This document shows, piece after piece, positions 29,646 to 36,397 of a DNA stretch of 64,000 nucleotides. Position 1 is the first letter of the stretch; each line of letters opens with the position of its first letter. The DNA is taken from positions 2,666,001-2,730,000 of the forward strand of contig JBLDXI010000015.1 in the NCBI GenBank assembly GCA_047495785.1. Reading direction: 5' to 3'. The translations under genes and the position numbers were made by a program. Source of the DNA: Lepidodermella squamata. Taxonomy: Eukaryota > Animalia > Gastrotricha. The notes beneath the pieces were generated by a model, which was not told the DNA's origin, searched no databases, and saw nothing but the letters and a program-made list of their open reading frames with translations.

Positions 29646-32600
29646 ATGAATTTCACTAGAATTTTTCGGTGCTGTCGCCATTTTCCTTACCTGCGTTTCA
29701 TCCTAACCGTGTCTGTTCTATGCAATCTATGGGCACTTTACGCATTTCTTCGTCCGAACCGAAAATTCAACCTGATTTTAAGCGGTAAACCGCCTAATGG
29801 TTCACCTCGAAATTCTACCTCAATCGCCTGGCTAGATAATCTCATCGATGCAAGCCCTGCAGGGTCGTTGCAGGTCTATCTGCCAGAAAATCGCGCCTTC
29901 ACGCTGCCGCCAGATGAAAAATGTCAACTAGTCACAGGAAAACGAATCGTGGCGACCTACGCCTCACACGGCCGTTACGTCGCAAGTGCCCAAATTCAGT
30001 GCCAAAATGCTGTGGCAATTCGTGGCATCGATGCTTGTCTCGTGGTAATGCCGAAATTTATGGATGAGGCGTTTTACAAGCGGAATATCGCGAAAATACT
30101 GTCTATCGAACGAGGTGCTGGGCTTTGGTTGTGGAAGCCTTATGTTATTTTGAAAATTATGCTCGAAATGACCAAGGATGATGTTTTGCTCTATATGGAT
30201 GCTGATAAATACCTGGTATACAACCTCGAGGAATATGTCTGTCTACAGGTGAATTTTCATTTATTATTTATTAGCTAAATTAGATACTCTAAATTGAGGC
30301 TTCAACTTTAGATTTTCCCAGTATATAGGTTTTTTGAAATTATAGTTCTTTATTTATTAATTTTTTAACTGATAGAGGGCGTTCCTGATCTAGCAACTTA
30401 TTTCACCCAACCGTGCACTCGCTCAATTTCTTCGCCCAATTTCCCATCCGCCCAGCCAATTCACTTACCACTACAATTTAAATTTCACACACACATACAA
30501 GACGCACCTTAATCTTCGTAGCCCCAGGGGACGGTGGTGATATTCTATTTTCCGATACTATTGATTGCGGCTCCAATCCAGGTAAACTAAGGAGCGAGGT
30601 TCCGGCGAAGCGACGGGTGCGCTGATAGGGCCATTTGACGCCGCGAAAGAGTGCGTTATGAAAGCAAGCTGAGCCGGACGGCTTCTCGGTCAACAGTTTA
30701 TTCTTCGGCGGCCTACCGTGTTTACTACCGCGTTCTACCACTTCATACTATCTGTTTGCATAGCGGCGGTACAGTTACAATGAGTAGCAATTAAACGCGC
30801 GGAAATATTAAGGTGGGTTAATAAGGTATGGCTTTTTTAATGGCCGCAATGTTTTTTGTCACATTAAAAAGGTGGGCAATAAAAATCACTTTTGGCAAAT
30901 TTTTTTTTGCAATCTTTGCGAACCTAGCTTATATTTCATTTCAACAGTAAGCAATTTTTCAACCGATATTAATCTGATGAACACCAACATCAGCAACATC
31001 AACAAGAAAATAAACAGTTCATCGCGTGCGCGTGCAAACAATTTCTAATTTAATTTAATAAGTAGGTTGGGCGAATTGAAAGTTGGGCGATTAAGCTGAA
31101 CGAGTGCGCGGTTGGGTGAATCATGTTGAACGGGAATCACCCAACTGAGAGTACGAGGTAGGTTACCGTAAATTGGGGCAAAATGGCCGCGGGAAAAAAA
31201 TGACCCCTTGTTTTTTTCGCATTTTTACACGTTTCAAAGGGTCCTGATTCCGATTTTATAGGAAGCTCATTTTGCCCCAGGTTTGGGGCAAATTGGACAG
31301 GTGTTTTGGGGCTAATTGGCCATCCTTATCCTTATAATGGGTTTTTAATATTTGATGATTGTGAGGGTTGAATGGTCGAGTGGTAGTAATCTGCAGTATA
31401 TGCGTGTCTGAGTCATATGGATGGCGATGGTTCGAGTCCTGCGGCGGCGGCATTTTTTTTACTCTGCTAAATTTTTTTGTAATTTATTATTATTTATGGA
31501 TCTTTTATCAGCATTTTGTCGATGTAATGTCAGTCATTTCCGCTCCCGTGACTGTATCGCTCGATGAAGACATGATTTATATTTGATCCTTTTGTATTGA
31601 ATATTGAAATATTAAGATTTTAACAAACTTTTCGTAAGATCTTTATTATTACTCTTCAACTGCCAACAAACGAGAGAAAAATATATGAATTGCCAACAAT
31701 TAGGCCAACAAGAATTGCATAGGAGTAGATATCACATGTTTTCAATGGAATCTGATCGTAGTTATCACAAGCCGTGTAAATCAGCTAGAAAGACGACGGA
31801 GATTTCATGAAGGTCGATATCGATGCAGAACGCCATCGATAACATTGACGCGAAAATTAGGCGGAGGTCCCTTGAACGGCAACCCTCGCTGAATCACAGA
31901 ATAATAATGATCGGAACCATTATAGGCTAGGTGAAGCTGACGATCCGTAGTTAGGCGGCTACCAAACGCCGGAAATACGCAAGAGGACGAATAGTTGTGA
32001 ACTATTACGTCGACTTGATATAATCGAGCGAAGGCGACCAAAGTGTCGTTGTCGCCCCATGTTTCGGCATTACTGGCATCAAAGCCATTGGACAGGGATA
32101 GAACTGCAAATTAAAGAAGAAATAGCCATATTAAGATCATTTTGTAACCCAAGTTTAGGAGGCTTCTTACCTCTTTCAGTTAAAGTGGCTAATTTATCTT
32201 CTTCCACGCCGGTTAAGACATCGATGAATAATAGCGGATTGTCCAAAATATACGACACAACATTTGACAATATCTCGTCAGTCTGTTCAAAGTTGCCTCG
32301 CAGCTGATGATTGAGGGCGTGAAATTGGCACCCACTGTAATGACATTTAAAATTATTACTGAAAAATTACATTATGATCGGCGTTTACCCGTCAGCCGGA
32401 ACGTTGACGAGAATCAAATCAAATGGTCTGAGGCGCTTTTTCAACAGCGTCAATCGTTTATCAGCGCCGGGCACTAACTTCACTTTTGGACCGGGTTTCT
32501 TCTTTGATGGGCGGCCGCGAGATTTCGACGGGGTGGCGGAAGATTTGATGGGTAATTCGTCAACAATTAAATTGGATTCGTTGTTATTTTCGTCGTCGAT

Positions 32601-35600
32601 TTCTGGCAGCTCTGATGTTACCGATGGCGGCTGAACGATATCTTCAATTGTCGAGGACGCTTTTCGTTTACGCTTTCGACTAGCTTTACGCGAAACAATG
32701 GTAACGTTGTCATCGTCGTCTAATTCAATTGTTGACGAGCGACGATTCCTTTCTGTCTCTTTGCGCTCCCTGATTTTAGCCAGATCCTCGACGGATATGC
32801 TCGTTCCAGGCTCCAAGCGGTGCTGACAATCCTTTTTCTTCTTTGTCACAACGCTTTTCTTCATATTTTCCTGCAGAAGTTTCAATATCGATTGACCGAT
32901 ATCAGTTTCCATCAGCTCTACTTTCGACTTTGGCATGTCATACGTCATCGTGATAGCGACCTTGCCATTAGAAGCATCAACCTTGACCTCCGGTAACAAC
33001 ACGGCGACATTTTCTAGGCCTTTATCCGCTTCAGGAATAATTGAATCTTCAAGTGCCTTGACCGGCAGGCGTGACAATCCTCGCTCCATGTCTACTGGCC
33101 AGATTCCGCAAGCTTCAAAACCGGCGATAATGTTGTGCAACTTGCTGCATGCCATGTTCCTTGTTCGTTTTCCCGCGGTTTTGACGCAGGTTATTTCATC
33201 GATGAGCTTCGTAAGCAGCGCCGGAAATGCTGATTTAGGTAAAGTCGTTTGATCGCGATGTGATTCCTTCCATTTTCGAAGGATCTTACGCCAGGCCTTT
33301 TTTAGTGGCCCAAAAAACGCCACATCGAGAGGCTGGCAGACGGAGGTTGCGTTAGGTGGAAGCAGTACGAATGAAATATCATGCTTCTCGCATAACTCGA
33401 GCACTTTGAATGACAAATGACTCGTCAAGTTATCGCCTATGACACACTTTTTGCCTTGGCCTTTCTTTAGATACGGAACGGCAATATTTACGAACCAGTC
33501 TTCAAATGTCGCCATTTCAAACCAGCCGCTTTTCGATATAGAAAATCTAGTCTTTGCCGGAGCTCCGTCGACCCAACTCTCTCGTAGCATTTTCTTAGAG
33601 CGGTAGCAAACGTAGGTAGGCAACATTGTACCGTCAGCGGCACCGCAAAACATAAGAGAAATGCTGGCTTTCGTTGAATTTAAGATACGTCCTGGACGTT
33701 TGGACTTGCGGCGAAAGACGAATTTCTTGCGTTTTCCTGGATCGTCAGTGACGTTAGTTTCATCATAGTTCACTATGAACCTAGGGTCCGCATTCTTCAG
33801 AGTTTGGCGAAGATTGGTATAAAAGACACTGAGTTTCTCTCTTGACAGTTCGGCCTTGGCTGTAGAAATATTTTGCCCAAACTTCTCGCCAATCTCCTTG
33901 TTATGGCGTTCCAGAAACCCGTAGTACCAGTCGACCCCTGGCAAATTGTCTTTAAAACGCACGACTCTTAATCCTTTACCGTCAAGATAAGATTTGACCA
34001 GCAAGCGGACGCCTTCGCCATCGAGAGGGAACCCGAAATCGGCTAGCATGCCTAAATATTTCATAACGGTACGTTCCACTTCATTAGAAAGTGCACACGG
34101 ACGACCCGATCCGACGAGTTCTGATTTCTTTGCTAAACGCTTCAAAGTGGAGCGGGGAAGTTTCATTTGGCCAGCAACTAGTGTAGCCGACTCACCATCT
34201 TGTACGCGCTTGATAGCAATTCGGAGGTCTTCATCGGTGTAGTTCCGGTAGCAGCGGCCACGCTTGGGGTTATACTTTCTAACCATCTAAATCTAAAGAC
34301 AGTAATAAGAATTGAATGCCACACGCCACCGGGGTTTAACATTAAAGATTGTAGATTGAGGAGATTCTCTTTCTCTTCTTTTGATCTGCTCAGCTTCAAC
34401 GTCGTCTTCAATTGACAATAACTTTGAGGTTGGCAACAACGCCGGTTCCATGGCCAGGGTTGTAACGTTGACCATCGACAATTGCGACCAGCCGATGTCC
34501 TGTGGCCCATAACGAATACAGTAACTGTGTTTGATTTTTTTTTACATGCCCGAGACAAGCGCGGTCTGAGCTGCGAATTACCTAACAAAATCCTACAGTT
34601 AGATAACAATGAGCCAATGTAAAGCGGACATGTATCACCTTGATAGCATTGCTGTCGTGGACGTTTGAAGGCTCACAGACGAATTCACAGATATCACCCG
34701 GAAAGCATTTCGCGTTATCAGCAATATGTTGACCAACAAGTAAAACAAAAATCATATCTGAAGGAACCTCGGTCTTAATCATTTTAGATCAGGACTTGAT
34801 CAGCGCAATCAAATTCTCCTGTTAAACAAATGAAATCAGGTGTGTAACCTATAACAAATACCAAAATATGAGCGTCACTCAAATACGTTCGAAACAAGGA
34901 GGGAATAACGGTACAATCAATGTTTTATTTATAATATTAAGACCAGGGCGTTGTGCGGCACGCAGCACACGCTTCGCAAGTCGATCTATTGAAGCGCGTC
35001 TCGCTCTTACGCTAACGTACGCACATTTCTTTATAGCGCCCAACTAATAGTTCAAGAGCAAATAATTATTGATAATTATTAAATGTTAATAATGTTTGGT
35101 TAACAAAACATTAGTTTTAATAATTTACTATAAATTACAAATGCTTTGATGTTAAATTGCCGCAGTATGGGCTCAAATTGCCCCCGTGTTTGAATTTTGC
35201 ATGGGGTAATTTGGCCACGATTACCTGGTCATACCTGTACCATCGCCCCGAGTCGTGCTTTTTTTTCCCGTAATCACAGAAGGCAACGACAGTCGGAAAA
35301 AATAACCTCTGTAGCCCTAGTCTTCGCGTTGGCTCCAGCTAATTCAATTAAAAGGGGTCATTTTTACCTGCCAAAACTCACCTCTGTGCAACAACATGCC
35401 GTGACCTCATTTCGGGACATACCTGGCTGAAAATTAGCAGGCTTGTAAAAGGCTTGTTGATAATTGTCCCCGTAAATTTTTGTAAAGTATTACCTTGTAG
35501 TTGTTGAGCTATCGATAAAAATGTGAAAACCTCAATTTTTGGCCAATTAGCCCCAAAGGTTCATTTTGCCCCAAATGACGGTATATAATATGGGCTCGTC

Positions 35601-36397
35601 GTTATCGATGATGAATATACAAATCGTAAAAAAATTGAGCATGTAACCTCAATTTTTCTTCGAGGAATTGCCGCAATTTTTGAAGTGCGTGTCCCATAAA
35701 TTACTCACTCATGTTGCGTGTCCCATTTAATTTGCGCTACCATTTTCTGAATTTTTCAACTTTTTGCGAATTTTCAAAAAAGTGTATCAGTGTTTTTGCG
35801 AATTTTCATGAATTTTTTTGTTTTCGCTTTTTCTTTAATTTTTGATTATTTAATTTGGATTTTTAATTTCTCTAGGAGCAGCTCAAACAAGACGTTGTAG
35901 TGTTTTACCAAGAATTCAGCGAGCTATCATGGACGAAGGCTGATGCCTATCTGCTGATGAATGTTGAGCATTTGCTGCCCAAGATCGCCACTACAATGCA
36001 GGTGTACGCGAGTTATCTGATGCTGCGAAAGTCTTTCGATTCAATCAGATTCGTCTCTGAATGGTTGACGTATGCTCAAGATGAACGCATCATGAATGAT
36101 GAGCCGAGCAGGTTCAGGCCAGATCTGCCGACTTTCAATCCCGTGAATAACCGGCATGACCAAACTGTGTTGAGTTTGCTGTCGAAGAAATGGAACCTAA
36201 CGGATTGGCCGAGCCCTGAGTGGAATGATGTCGCGCGGTCGCAGAATGGCAGCGATGTCGATGGCATTACAGCTGTCAGCAGCTTCAATCCTTTGAACGT
36301 TGCTGAGCTGAAAAAACTTGGCCTTGTGATACCGACTCGTAAAATCATCAAAAAGGATATAACCGTGAACCTTGGCATTATTGAACTTCCTGTATAA
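29646..36397 (+). CDS. Type II membrane DxD glycosyltransferase-like protein (exons 29646-30248, 35876-36397; 5.6 kb TE-filled intron)
   Basis: N-terminal TM; RGAGLWLWKPYVI, LYMDAD, WTKAD and RHDQTVLSLL motifs; CAG/GT and TAG/G phase-0 junction. Confidence 0.75.
30377..31142. mobile_element. MULE-like MITE
   Basis: Imperfect long TIRs (TTCACCCAACCG motif); 9 bp flanks AACTGATAG / AACTGAGAG. Confidence 0.6.
31365..31460 (+). ncRNA. tRNA-like Pol III cassette inside the pogo element
   Basis: A box TGGTCGAGTGG, B box GGTTCGAGTCC, T8 terminator; no valid cloverleaf. Confidence 0.5.
31805..34286 (-). CDS. pogo transposase (psq HTH, CENP-B HTH, DDE_1) spliced to a C-terminal OTU deubiquitinase domain (exons 34286-32389, 32334-32171, 32103-31805)
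   Basis: NYDET, GDNLTSH and QPLDV with DD35D spacing; spliced product continues VPADGGCQFHAL ... WGDNDTLVAFARLYQVDVIV ... HLAYNGSDHYYSV. Confidence 0.88.
34408..34782 (-). CDS. Stand-alone HIRAN-domain protein encoded by the pogo element (exons 34782-34639, 34581-34408)
   Basis: Spliced ORF of ~105 aa with EPSNVHDSNAIKV..RACLGHVKK, matching the HIRAN consensus EPxNxxDxNAIxV...xGHV. Confidence 0.8.

What the first reader, a model, noticed from the sequence alone, without database searches (positions are those of the whole stretch)
31805..32400. Intact OTU catalytic residues hidden by an intron splitting the DGxC motif
The transposase ORF appears to stop at VPADG, but GG/GT at 32389/32388 and AG/T at 32335/32334 give VPADGGCQFHAL. 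A second intron leads to WGD..L.AFARLY and HLAY..DHYYSV. The Asp, Cys and His are all present, so an active DUB is predicted. Intron retention would give a transposase without OTU, so two isoforms are possible (inference).
Basis: partly seen in the sequence, partly recalled or inferred. Interest (0 to 1): 0.75.

Follow-up and report, generated by a model that had tools for sequence, protein, structure and literature searches.

The report
Pogo transposase with spliced-on OTU domain
A cut-and-paste "pogo" jumping gene in this small invertebrate genome carries, behind two short introns, a complete deubiquitinase-type (OTU) domain fused to the end of its transposase. This is a new host family for an add-on already known from other transposons, and its enzymatic activity is untested.

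Summary
On the minus strand the 633-aa pogo-type transposase ORF (34286-32385) stops at ...VPADG*. A GT donor starts at 32388 and an AG acceptor ends at 32335. Removing this 54-nt intron gives D-G-G-C, the OTU Cys-loop.

A second intron (32170-32104, 67 nt) leads to exon 3, which carries WGDNDTLVAFARLY and the His-loop HLAYNGSDHYYSV.

- **Colinear match:** searched exon by exon, the three pieces fall on abutting parts of an OTUD3-like OTU profile: columns 4-28, 29-69 and 82-161. Exon 3 alone hits human OTUD3 at E 5.8e-9.
- **RNA evidence:** contigs of an RNA-like run show intron 2 spliced exactly as predicted. That run has no cover over intron 1.
- **Comparative evidence:** a relative about 45% identical (L001) has both introns at the same codon positions and phases, with unrelated intron sequence, and restores DG|DC.
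- **The element:** it is a real transposon, with TA|CCGT... inverted ends, an intact DDD triad, many copies and deletion derivatives.

OTU domains on transposases are known from Ginger1 and Helitrons. I found no report for pogo.

DUB activity and the "two isoforms" idea remain inference.

The scan found the same family before on another piece of this genome (s1-429988).

The parts
31164..31165 (.). TA target-site duplication, left
   Evidence: TA directly outside the inverted end. Contigs of DNA run X2 diverge before 31164 (table 7).
31166..31185 (+). Terminal inverted repeat, left (CCGTAAATTGGGGCAAAATG)
   Evidence: Only two matches in the window, 0.06 expected by chance.
31642..31647 (-). 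AATAAA, candidate poly(A) signal about 160 nt after the stop
   Evidence: Read. Its function is inferred.
31805..32103 (-). Exon 3: C-terminal half of the OTU domain with the His-loop (His codon 31909-31907) and a conserved tail. Stop at 31807-31805.
   Evidence: OTUD3 structure 4bou_A at E 5.8e-9. hhalign to the OTU profile, columns 82-161, E 2.5e-21. 47% identical to L001 exon 3. Foldseek hits of the half-domain model are nearly all OTU domains, but weak.
32104..32170 (-). Intron 2 (67 nt, GTAAGA..TTTGCAG, phase 1)
   Evidence: Spliced in run X1. The loose end at 32105 (CTTTCAGT) matches 32173-32180, and the last 17 of 20 loose letters at 32171 match the start of exon 3. GC is 0.33 against 0.42-0.48 in the exons. 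L001 has an intron at the same position and phase.
32171..32334 (-). Exon 2: Cys-loop (Cys codon 32330-32328) and the following helices of the OTU domain
   Evidence: Translation. hhalign to profile columns 29-69, starting at the NC of DGNC, E 8.6e-6. 42% identical to L001 exon 2, E 2e-14.
32335..32388 (-). Intron 1 (54 nt, GTAAAC..TTACAG, phase 2) splitting D-G|G-C. It holds two in-frame stops.
   Evidence: Sequence. GC 0.26, and no alignment to the L001 intron above shuffles. L001 has an intron at the same position and phase. No RNA cover.
32389..34286 (-). Exon 1: pogo-type transposase (N-terminal HTH, DDE_1 core with D175, D285, D321), a basic/acidic linker with a GRP (AT-hook-like) motif, and the first strand of the OTU domain ending ..VPAD-G
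   Evidence: Pfam DDE_1 at 1.6e-17. 438 relatives, the best 45% identical, with HTH_psq plus DDE_1. The catalytic D columns and Met1 are invariant. The tail aligns to profile columns 4-28 and to the L001 tail.
34408..34782 (-). Upstream separate small gene (about 105 aa, HIRAN-like) with one 57-nt intron at 34638-34582
   Evidence: The intron appears as an X1 joint, 34579>34637 (cut +2), CT..AC. Pfam HIRAN is only E 0.061 on exon 1. The exon-wise PDB sequence search gave nothing.
35562..35581 (-). Terminal inverted repeat, right (CCGTCATTTGGGGCAAAATG)
35582..35583 (.). TA target-site duplication, right
   Evidence: X2 contigs diverge behind 35583.

Best explanation
The stretch is the 3' part of the transposase gene of an autonomous pogo-family (Tc1/mariner-type, DDD) DNA transposon at 31166-35581.

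**Gene model.** The gene has three exons. Exon 1 encodes the DNA-binding and DDD catalytic core, a charged linker, and the first strand of an OTU domain up to Asp-Gly. Two short spliceosomal introns (54 and 67 nt) interrupt the rest. After splicing, the transposase carries a C-terminal OTUD3-like OTU cysteine-protease domain of about 160 residues. The Cys-loop (D-G-G-C) and the His-loop (..DHY..) are both complete.

**Shown.**
- The exon/intron anatomy.
- OTU homology of each exon.
- Splicing of intron 2.
- Conservation of both intron positions in a distant relative.
- Transposon hallmarks.

**Inferred.**
- Splicing of intron 1.
- That the domain is an active deubiquitinase or ubiquitin-like protease. 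It would act in trans on ubiquitinated transposase or on host repair and chromatin proteins at the excision or integration site. This is the role proposed for the OTU/Ulp1 domains of Ginger1 and for the DUB domains of Helitrons.
For: - **Sequence and translations:**
- **Transposase:** Pfam DDE_1 at 1.6e-17. There are 438 pogo relatives. D175, D285 and D321 are invariant.
- **OTU, exon by exon:** exon 3 against OTUD3 4bou_A gives E 5.8e-9, aligned through the catalytic His. The hhalign matches to a 12-sequence OTU profile are colinear and abut: tail to columns 4-28, exon 2 to 29-69, exon 3 to 82-161, with E 2e-3, 8.6e-6 and 2.5e-21.
- **Full-length hits:** most of the full-length hits tested from the exon-3 search carry Pfam OTU.
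- **RNA:** the X1 contigs join 32103 to 32171. They also remove the 57-nt intron of the neighbouring gene. DNA run X2 keeps the introns.
- **Comparative:** L001 has ..EVAGDG|gtttgt..(59 nt)..ttttag|A GAC TGT (DG|DC) and a second phase-1 intron (62 nt) after ..EER. Exons are 42-47% identical at the protein level. The introns are AT-rich, and intron 1 is unalignable.
- **L002:** its exon-3 homologue starts right after an acceptor. The His is conserved in all three sequences and the Cys in both that cover it.
- **Transposon status:** TA-flanked inverted ends. Copies have different flanks, and internal-deletion joints occur in X2.
- **Precedent:** Ginger1 transposases carry a C-terminal OTU or Ulp1 domain, and Helitrons carry OTU (PMC2836005; PMC11417382; PMC9741609).
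Against: - No RNA contig covers intron 1, so neither the spliced nor the retained form was seen (bin 32342-32490 depth 0).
- Pfam's OTU model did not score either exon on its own.
- The half-domain model is of low confidence (pLDDT 64) and its OTU matches are not significant (best E 0.02).
- The residue two after the catalytic His is Tyr here and in L001, and Met in L002. It is Asp, Asn or Ser in the cellular relatives. [quoted passage not shown]
- Triad-complete OTUs can be inactive in vitro (ALG13 and OTUD6B in PMC3705208). PMC9741609 notes that no transposon OTU has been assayed.
- Only two relatives of this OTU clade exist in the protein collections searched. Both lie on short contigs, so the full architecture is confirmed only in this genome.
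Confidence: 0.8

Rival explanations
1. The OTU domain is expressed as modelled but is catalytically dead. It would serve as a ubiquitin- or protein-binding scaffold, or as a targeting module.
For: - Tyr or Met occupies the position two after the His, where the relatives have Asp, Asn or Ser.
- Triad-complete OTUs can be inactive, and OTUD4 can act as a scaffold (PMC3705208; PMC4654579).
- Other pogo relatives carry a non-enzymatic conserved C-terminal block at the same place.
Against: - Cys, His and the DG Asp are kept in every diverged copy where they can be seen.
- Loss of the Cys is the usual first sign of inactivation in OTUs (PMC4654579), and it has not happened here.
Confidence: 0.25
2. 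The OTU domain works in cis as a processing protease that cuts the fusion protein and releases the transposase. Tymovirus OTU-like PRO/DUB domains process their own polyprotein in this way.
For: - Tymovirus PRO/DUB structures are among the fold matches of the half-domain model.
- A long charged, probably disordered linker of about 190 residues separates the DDD core from the OTU domain.
Against: - The closest relatives by sequence are cellular OTUD3-type deubiquitinases, not viral processing proteases.
- No cleavage-site motif was identified.
Confidence: 0.08
3. Exons 2 and 3 are not joined to the transposase. They would be a captured host OTU fragment that is decaying or separately expressed, and the real product is the 633-aa ORF ending in VPADG.
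For: - There is no RNA evidence for the intron-1 junction.
- None of the 120 best pogo relatives has an OTU domain.
Against: - The last 25 residues of exon 1 are themselves the first strand of the OTU domain, and they end exactly at DG.
- There is no start codon or promoter for a separate OTU gene, and exon 2 begins mid-codon.
- The same split, in the same phase, is kept in L001 at about 45% identity, with open exons and a diverged intron.
- Intron 2 is spliced, so the region is transcribed and processed.
Confidence: 0.05
4. Intron 1 uses the earlier acceptor (AG at 32360-32359). That gives a 30-nt intron and an in-frame 8-residue insertion (NNFKCHYS) between DG and GC, which would distort the Cys-loop.
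For: The alternative junction is also in frame (read).
Against: - A 30-nt intron is far shorter than the two RNA-confirmed introns of this element (57 and 67 nt).
- Neither the 12 profile sequences nor L001 has any insertion between DG and xC.
Confidence: 0.04

Closest known systems
Ginger1 DNA transposons (Bao, Kapitonov and Jurka 2010, PMC2836005)
   Same: A cut-and-paste DDE transposase carries an extra C-terminal OTU (or Ulp1) cysteine-protease domain. The coding region holds a few introns and the element is bounded by TIRs.
   Different: - Ginger1 has a Gypsy-integrase-type core (YPYY, H2C2 zinc finger, GPY/F). Here the core is a pogo-type DDE_1/DDD core with an N-terminal HTH and a TA target duplication.
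- The OTU acquisition is therefore independent.
Helitron / Helentron elements with OTU domains (PMC11417382, PMC9741609)
   Same: The transposon recurrently carries an OTU or another DUB domain. The proposed role is to protect or modify proteins needed for transposition, and it is untested biochemically.
   Different: - Those are rolling-circle RepHel elements with no DDE transposase.
- Their OTU lies upstream of, or within, a giant RepHel ORF.
Human OTUD3 (PDB 4BOU; OTUD subfamily, Mevissen et al. 2013, PMC3705208)
   Same: It is the best solved-structure match of exon 3 (E 5.8e-9). The OTU core is the same small size (about 150 aa), and the Cys-loop DGxC and the His-loop ..AYxxxxHYxSV are shared.
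   Different: - Exon 3 is only about 40% identical to the closest cellular (OTUD3-like) relatives found.
- There is no UBA domain.
- The residue two after the His is Tyr, where OTUD3 has Asp.
- Here the domain is fused to a transposase.
- Linkage preference is unknown.
pogo/Tigger-type transposases (HTH_psq + DDE_1), e.g. the hits
   Same: - The first 410 or so residues are 36-45% identical.
- Met1, the HTH and the DDD residues are all conserved.
- The ends are TA-flanked TIRs.
   Different: The relatives end in a different conserved C-terminal block or in nothing. None of the 120 best hits has Pfam OTU.
Drosophila P element IVS3 retention (from my own knowledge, not checked here)
   Different: No evidence of regulated retention was found here. 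The truncated form would keep the whole transposase and lose only the OTU domain.

Membership tests
OTU cysteine proteases (Pfam PF02338, OTUD subfamily) | Cys-loop D-G-x-C with the nucleophile Cys at the start of a helix | tested here: met
   D-G|G-C is formed across intron 1. The exon-1 tail ends at profile column 28 (the DG) and exon 2 starts at column 29 (the NC). This depends on the intron-1 splice, which rests on comparison and not on RNA.
OTU cysteine proteases (Pfam PF02338, OTUD subfamily) | His-loop with the catalytic His (..AY....HYxSV) | tested here: met
   HLAYNGSDHYYSV aligns to HIAYRYGEHYDSV of OTUD3 and to the invariant His columns of the profile.
OTU cysteine proteases (Pfam PF02338, OTUD subfamily) | Acidic or amide residue that orients the His (Asp/Asn after the His in typical DUBs, PMC9741609) | tested here: inconclusive
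   Position His+2 is Tyr here and in L001, and Met in L002. It is Asp, Asn or Ser in the 12 cellular relatives. The Asp of DGxC, counted as the triad Asp in PMC4654579, is present.
OTU cysteine proteases (Pfam PF02338, OTUD subfamily) | Significant similarity over the whole domain | tested here: met
Exon-wise hhalign gives E 2e-3, 8.6e-6 and 2.5e-21, colinear over columns 4-161 of 171. The Pfam HMM gave no hit on the separate exons.
OTU cysteine proteases (Pfam PF02338, OTUD subfamily) | OTU (papain-like) fold | tested here: inconclusive
   Only exon 3 was folded (pLDDT 64). The first 18 Foldseek hits are OTU or OTU-like proteases with OTUD3 first, but the best E is 0.02.
OTU cysteine proteases (Pfam PF02338, OTUD subfamily) | Isopeptidase activity on ubiquitin or a ubiquitin-like modifier | not testable with these tools
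   Needs a probe or cleavage assay.
pogo family of Tc1/mariner-type DNA transposons | DDE_1 catalytic core with three conserved acidic residues (DDD) | tested here: met
   Pfam DDE_1 at 1.6e-17. D175 (NYDETN), D285 (GDNLTSH) and D321 (QPLDV) are invariant among 9 sequences.
pogo family of Tc1/mariner-type DNA transposons | N-terminal psq/CENP-B-type helix-turn-helix | tested here: inconclusive
   Pfam gives only weak CENP-B_N and HTH hits (E 0.04-0.12). The region does align with relatives that carry PF05225 HTH_psq.
pogo family of Tc1/mariner-type DNA transposons | Terminal inverted repeats flanked by a TA target-site duplication | tested here: met
   TA|CCGTAAATTGGGGCAAAATG ... CATTTTGCCCCAAATGACGG|TA.
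pogo family of Tc1/mariner-type DNA transposons | Several copies with different flanks | tested here: met
In X2, 6 and 4 contigs diverge exactly outside 31164 and 35583. Deletion derivatives are present.
Ginger1 transposons | Gypsy-integrase-like core (H2C2 zinc finger, DDE, GPY/F) | tested here: not met
   Pfam finds DDE_1 and DDE_3 and no integrase family. The relatives are pogo-type. It works like a Ginger1 transposase-OTU fusion but is not a member.

The most novel reading that the evidence does not exclude
A pogo transposon lineage has assembled its own ubiquitin and DNA-damage toolkit: a separate small HIRAN-like (DNA 3'-end binding) protein plus an active OTUD3-like deubiquitinase fused to the transposase. 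The toolkit would steer host repair of the excision break, or stabilise the transposase. Retention of intron 1 would switch the element between OTU-plus and OTU-minus transposase forms, and the second gene may be expressed through the host's spliced-leader trans-splicing.
Probability: 0.15. Interest if true: 0.75.

Novelty: new variant of a known kind. Interest (0 to 1): 0.45.

Why it matters
Protease and deubiquitinase add-ons have been picked up independently by Ginger1, Mutator and Helitron elements. A paper I read (PMC9741609) states that no transposon OTU domain has been tested for activity.

A compact pogo element of about 4.4 kb offers a tractable system to ask what a DUB does for a cut-and-paste transposon. 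It has an apparently intact DDD core, an intact OTU motif set, high-copy deletion derivatives and expressed, spliced RNA.

The case also shows how exon-blind ORF calling hides such domains. Every public relative of this OTU clade is recorded only as an unannotated ORF fragment of about 110 aa.

Tried and rejected
- **Pfam on exons 2 and 3 separately:** no OTU hit. Exon 2 gave only a chance-level FRP match.
- **Word search with exon 3 alone:** nothing. With the three-sequence profile it returned only the two fragments already known.
- **Cluster look-up of P0121 and P0122:** both are singletons on short contigs, so no longer relative could be fetched.
- **Scans for relatives of exon 3:** metagenome and viral contigs gave none. 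A tblastn search against phages gave none.
- **RNA test of intron 1:**
- **Fold of exon 3 alone:** low confidence. The matches are coherent but not significant.
- **HIRAN-like neighbour:** the exon-wise PDB sequence search gave nothing.
- **Other copies:** the window holds no second copy of any of the pieces.
- **Literature:** searches for pogo or mariner with OTU or deubiquitinase found only the Ginger and Helitron papers. The HIRAN-plus-transposon search was swamped by author names.
- **Rejected readings:** a HIRAN-transposase fusion, because Met1 of the transposase is the conserved N-terminus. The 30-nt alternative for intron 1 is also rejected.
Full report
**Observation.** All coordinates here are on the minus strand. 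The 633-aa ORF 34286-32385 ends ...L-V-N-V-P-A-D-G-stop.
- The last Gly codon overlaps a donor, GG|GTAAAC, so exon 1 ends at 32389.
- 54 nt further on lies the acceptor TTACAG|T, so exon 2 starts at 32334.
- Exon 2 ends ..T-E-R plus one base at 32171, at a consensus donor AG|GTAAGA.
- Intron 2 is 32170-32104 (67 nt, acceptor TTTGCAG).
- Exon 3 (32103-31805) reads ..ETWGDNDTLVAFARLYQVDVIVHN...QLHLAYNGSDHYYSV.. and ends at TGA.

The coordinates and peptides in the finding are correct.

**What the first exon is.** Pfam finds DDE_1 (1.6e-17) and weak CENP-B/HTH matches at the N-terminus.
- The word search finds 438 relatives. The best are 45% identical, from insects, a mollusc and unnamed assemblies, and almost all carry HTH_psq plus DDE_1. 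None of the 120 listed carries OTU.
- In an alignment with eight of them, Met1 and the three catalytic Asp (D175 in NYDETN, D285 in GDNLTSH, D321 in QPLDV) are invariant. The transposase looks intact and starts at 34286.
- The relatives share a different conserved C-terminal block where this gene has its linker and OTU exons.

**The element.** It is bounded by TA|CCGTAAATTGGGGCAAAATG (31166-31185) and the inverted copy ending at 35581|TA. This is a pogo/Tc1-mariner-type end with a TA duplication.
- In DNA run X2 a contig covers 31896-34710 with 8 differences.
- Several X2 contigs diverge exactly outside 31164 and 35583.
- The element ends are about 50 times deeper than the inside.
- The joints 31206>35381 and 31269>35393 show internally deleted derivatives.

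So this is a multi-copy transposon family with MITE-like relatives.

Each exon was searched by reference.
- Exon 3 alone matches the solved OTU domain of human OTUD3 (4bou_A, E 5.8e-9). The alignment runs through the His-loop.
- The exhaustive search with exon 3 gave 95 hits. Two are short ORF fragments at 48-51% identity. Most of the other hits tested with Pfam are cellular proteins that carry OTU.
- I built a profile of twelve of these OTU domains (A1). The last 25 residues of exon 1 align to columns 4-28 and end on the DG (E 2e-3, weak alone). Exon 2 aligns to columns 29-69 and starts on the NC (E 8.6e-6). Exon 3 aligns to columns 82-161 (E 2.5e-21).
- The three pieces are colinear and abut exactly at the intron-1 junction. 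This is what a split OTU domain predicts.
- Pfam's own OTU model did not score the separate exons.
- A model of exon 3 alone was of low confidence (pLDDT 64). Its first 18 Foldseek matches in the PDB are OTU or OTU-like proteases, led by OTUD3, but none is significant.

**Are the introns real?**
- *RNA.* The one RNA-like public run (X1, stored as contigs and labelled only as a guess) has contigs that run to 32105 and continue with CTTTCAGT, which is 32173-32180. Another enters 32171 from ..ATTGGACAGGGATAGAA, which is the start of exon 3. This is the 32103|32171 junction, allowing for the two shared letters.
- The same run removes a 57-nt GT..AG intron (34638-34582) from the upstream gene, while DNA run X2 keeps all introns. 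X1 therefore behaves as RNA.
- X1 has no cover at all on 32342-32490, so intron 1 is untested by RNA, in both its spliced and retained form.
- *Comparison.* The best fragment hit lies on a 1.2-kb assembly contig (L001). It reads ..RLKLIQKRLDPFGLKLYEVAGDG with donor GG|GTTTGT, then a 59-nt AT-rich intron, then the acceptor TTTTAG|A GAC TGT CAA TTT CAC. This restores D-G|D-C-Q-F-H-A.
- L001 has a second intron (62 nt, phase 1) after ..E-E-R, and then an exon-3 homologue.
- Protein identity between the window and L001 is 43% for the tail, 42% for exon 2 and 47% for exon 3.
- At the DNA level the exon alignments score z 3.6-8.7 above shuffles, but intron 1 does not (z -0.6). Intron GC is 0.19-0.33 against 0.42-0.50 in the exons.
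- A third sequence (L002) begins inside the equivalent of intron 2 and has its exon-3 homologue right after an acceptor.

Conserved position and phase, combined with unrelated intron sequence, is strong evidence that intron 1 is a genuine intron and that the fused reading frame is under selection. The only other in-frame acceptor (32360-32359) would give a 30-nt intron and an insertion in the Cys-loop that no relative has.

**Catalytic residues.**
- The Asp and Gly of DGxC come from exon 1 and the split codon.
- The Cys is the second full codon of exon 2.
- The His of ..DHY.. is in exon 3. It aligns to the catalytic His of OTUD3, which follows the His-loop R178-Y-G-E (PMC3705208).

One caveat applies. 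[quoted passage not shown] Two residues after the His, the cellular relatives have Asp, Asn or Ser, while this clade has Tyr or Met.

PMC4654579 counts the DGxC Asp as the triad Asp. It also shows that an OTU can stay inactive even with the Cys restored. PMC3705208 found ALG13 and OTUD6B inactive in vitro despite complete triads. "Intact motifs" is therefore shown, and "active DUB" is a reasonable prediction only.

**Isoforms.** Unspliced intron 1 puts a TAA right after the donor, so a 633-aa OTU-less transposase is possible in principle. The same holds for almost any retained intron, and L001 also has an early stop in its intron.

No data bear on this idea. From general knowledge I note that a stop followed by a spliced intron 2 would, in many animals, mark the RNA for nonsense-mediated decay.

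**Mechanism.** Most likely (inferred) the transposase brings a ubiquitin or ubiquitin-like isopeptidase to its own complex.
- It could remove ubiquitin from the transposase or from host repair and chromatin factors. This was proposed for Ginger1 OTU/Ulp1 domains (PMC2836005) and for Helitron DUB domains (PMC9741609).
- Rival readings are a dead scaffold domain, a cis-acting processing protease, an unjoined captured fragment, and the 30-nt splice variant.

**Comparison and novelty.** Transposase-OTU fusions are known in Ginger1, and OTU domains are known in Helitrons. The transposase core here is pogo-type, not integrase-type and not RepHel, so the domain was acquired independently.

I found no paper that reports OTU on a pogo or Tc1/mariner transposase. 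That is absence within a limited library, not proof. In the protein collections this OTU clade has only two other members, both unannotated fragments.

The scan itself had already noted and followed up another copy of the same family on another piece of this genome (s1-429988), and the whole element in this window (s1-391705). Other notes take the genome for a gastrotrich with spliced-leader trans-splicing. I did not test that.

**Verdict.** It is a new variant of a known kind. Activity and isoforms remain open.

Noticed in passing
window 34408-34782 (minus strand): A separate small gene lies upstream of the transposase: ATG at 34782, exon 1 ending ..EPSNVHDSNAIK, a 57-nt intron 34638-34582 removed in run X1, and a stop at 34410-34408. 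It looks HIRAN-like (Pfam HIRAN E 0.061 on exon 1 only). The exon-wise PDB sequence search found nothing.
   Followed up: partly
window 34287-34298 (minus strand): The transposase ATG is directly preceded by ..ctttagatttag|ATG. This is an unpaired TAG acceptor 120 nt after the stop of the upstream gene. Other notes of this scan report spliced-leader trans-splicing at such sites in this genome, so the element may express its two genes as an operon-like pair.
   Followed up: no
window 34427 (run X1): One contig ends at 34427 and runs on, towards higher coordinates, into 21 untemplated A's. That would fit an antisense (+ strand) polyadenylated RNA, with AATAAC at 34415-34420 on the + strand, or a contig artefact.
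   Followed up: no
window 31166-31450 and 35240-35581: The element ends are about 50 times deeper than its inside in DNA run X2. Joints 31206>35381 and 31269>35393 show internally deleted, MITE-like derivatives. Subterminal TTTGGGGC(A/T)AATTGG repeats occur at both ends.
   Followed up: partly
alignment A3, last ~130 columns: Six of the eight pogo relatives aligned with this transposase share a conserved C-terminal block (..FVLV..Y....K..FVAQI...F.RKS.K..Y.FP..D..V...I..L.P..RRG..F) with no Pfam name. This element has the OTU exons in its place, which suggests a module swap.
   Followed up: no
L001 1130-1214: The relative's contig ends in repeats of GTCGCCCCAAATTGG / GGGGCGACTTT. These resemble the AATTGGGGC core of the window's inverted ends, so L001 is probably the 3' end of a related transposon in another organism.
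   Followed up: no
window 30394-30457 and 31065-31128: A 64-nt inverted repeat pair (78% complementary, 607 nt apart) lies just left of the element. It may be another small inverted-repeat element.
   Followed up: no
window 29646-30278 and 35900-36397 (plus strand): Two same-strand ORFs flank the transposon (210 and 165 aa, no Pfam family). They may be exons of one host gene with the element sitting in its intron.
   Followed up: partly
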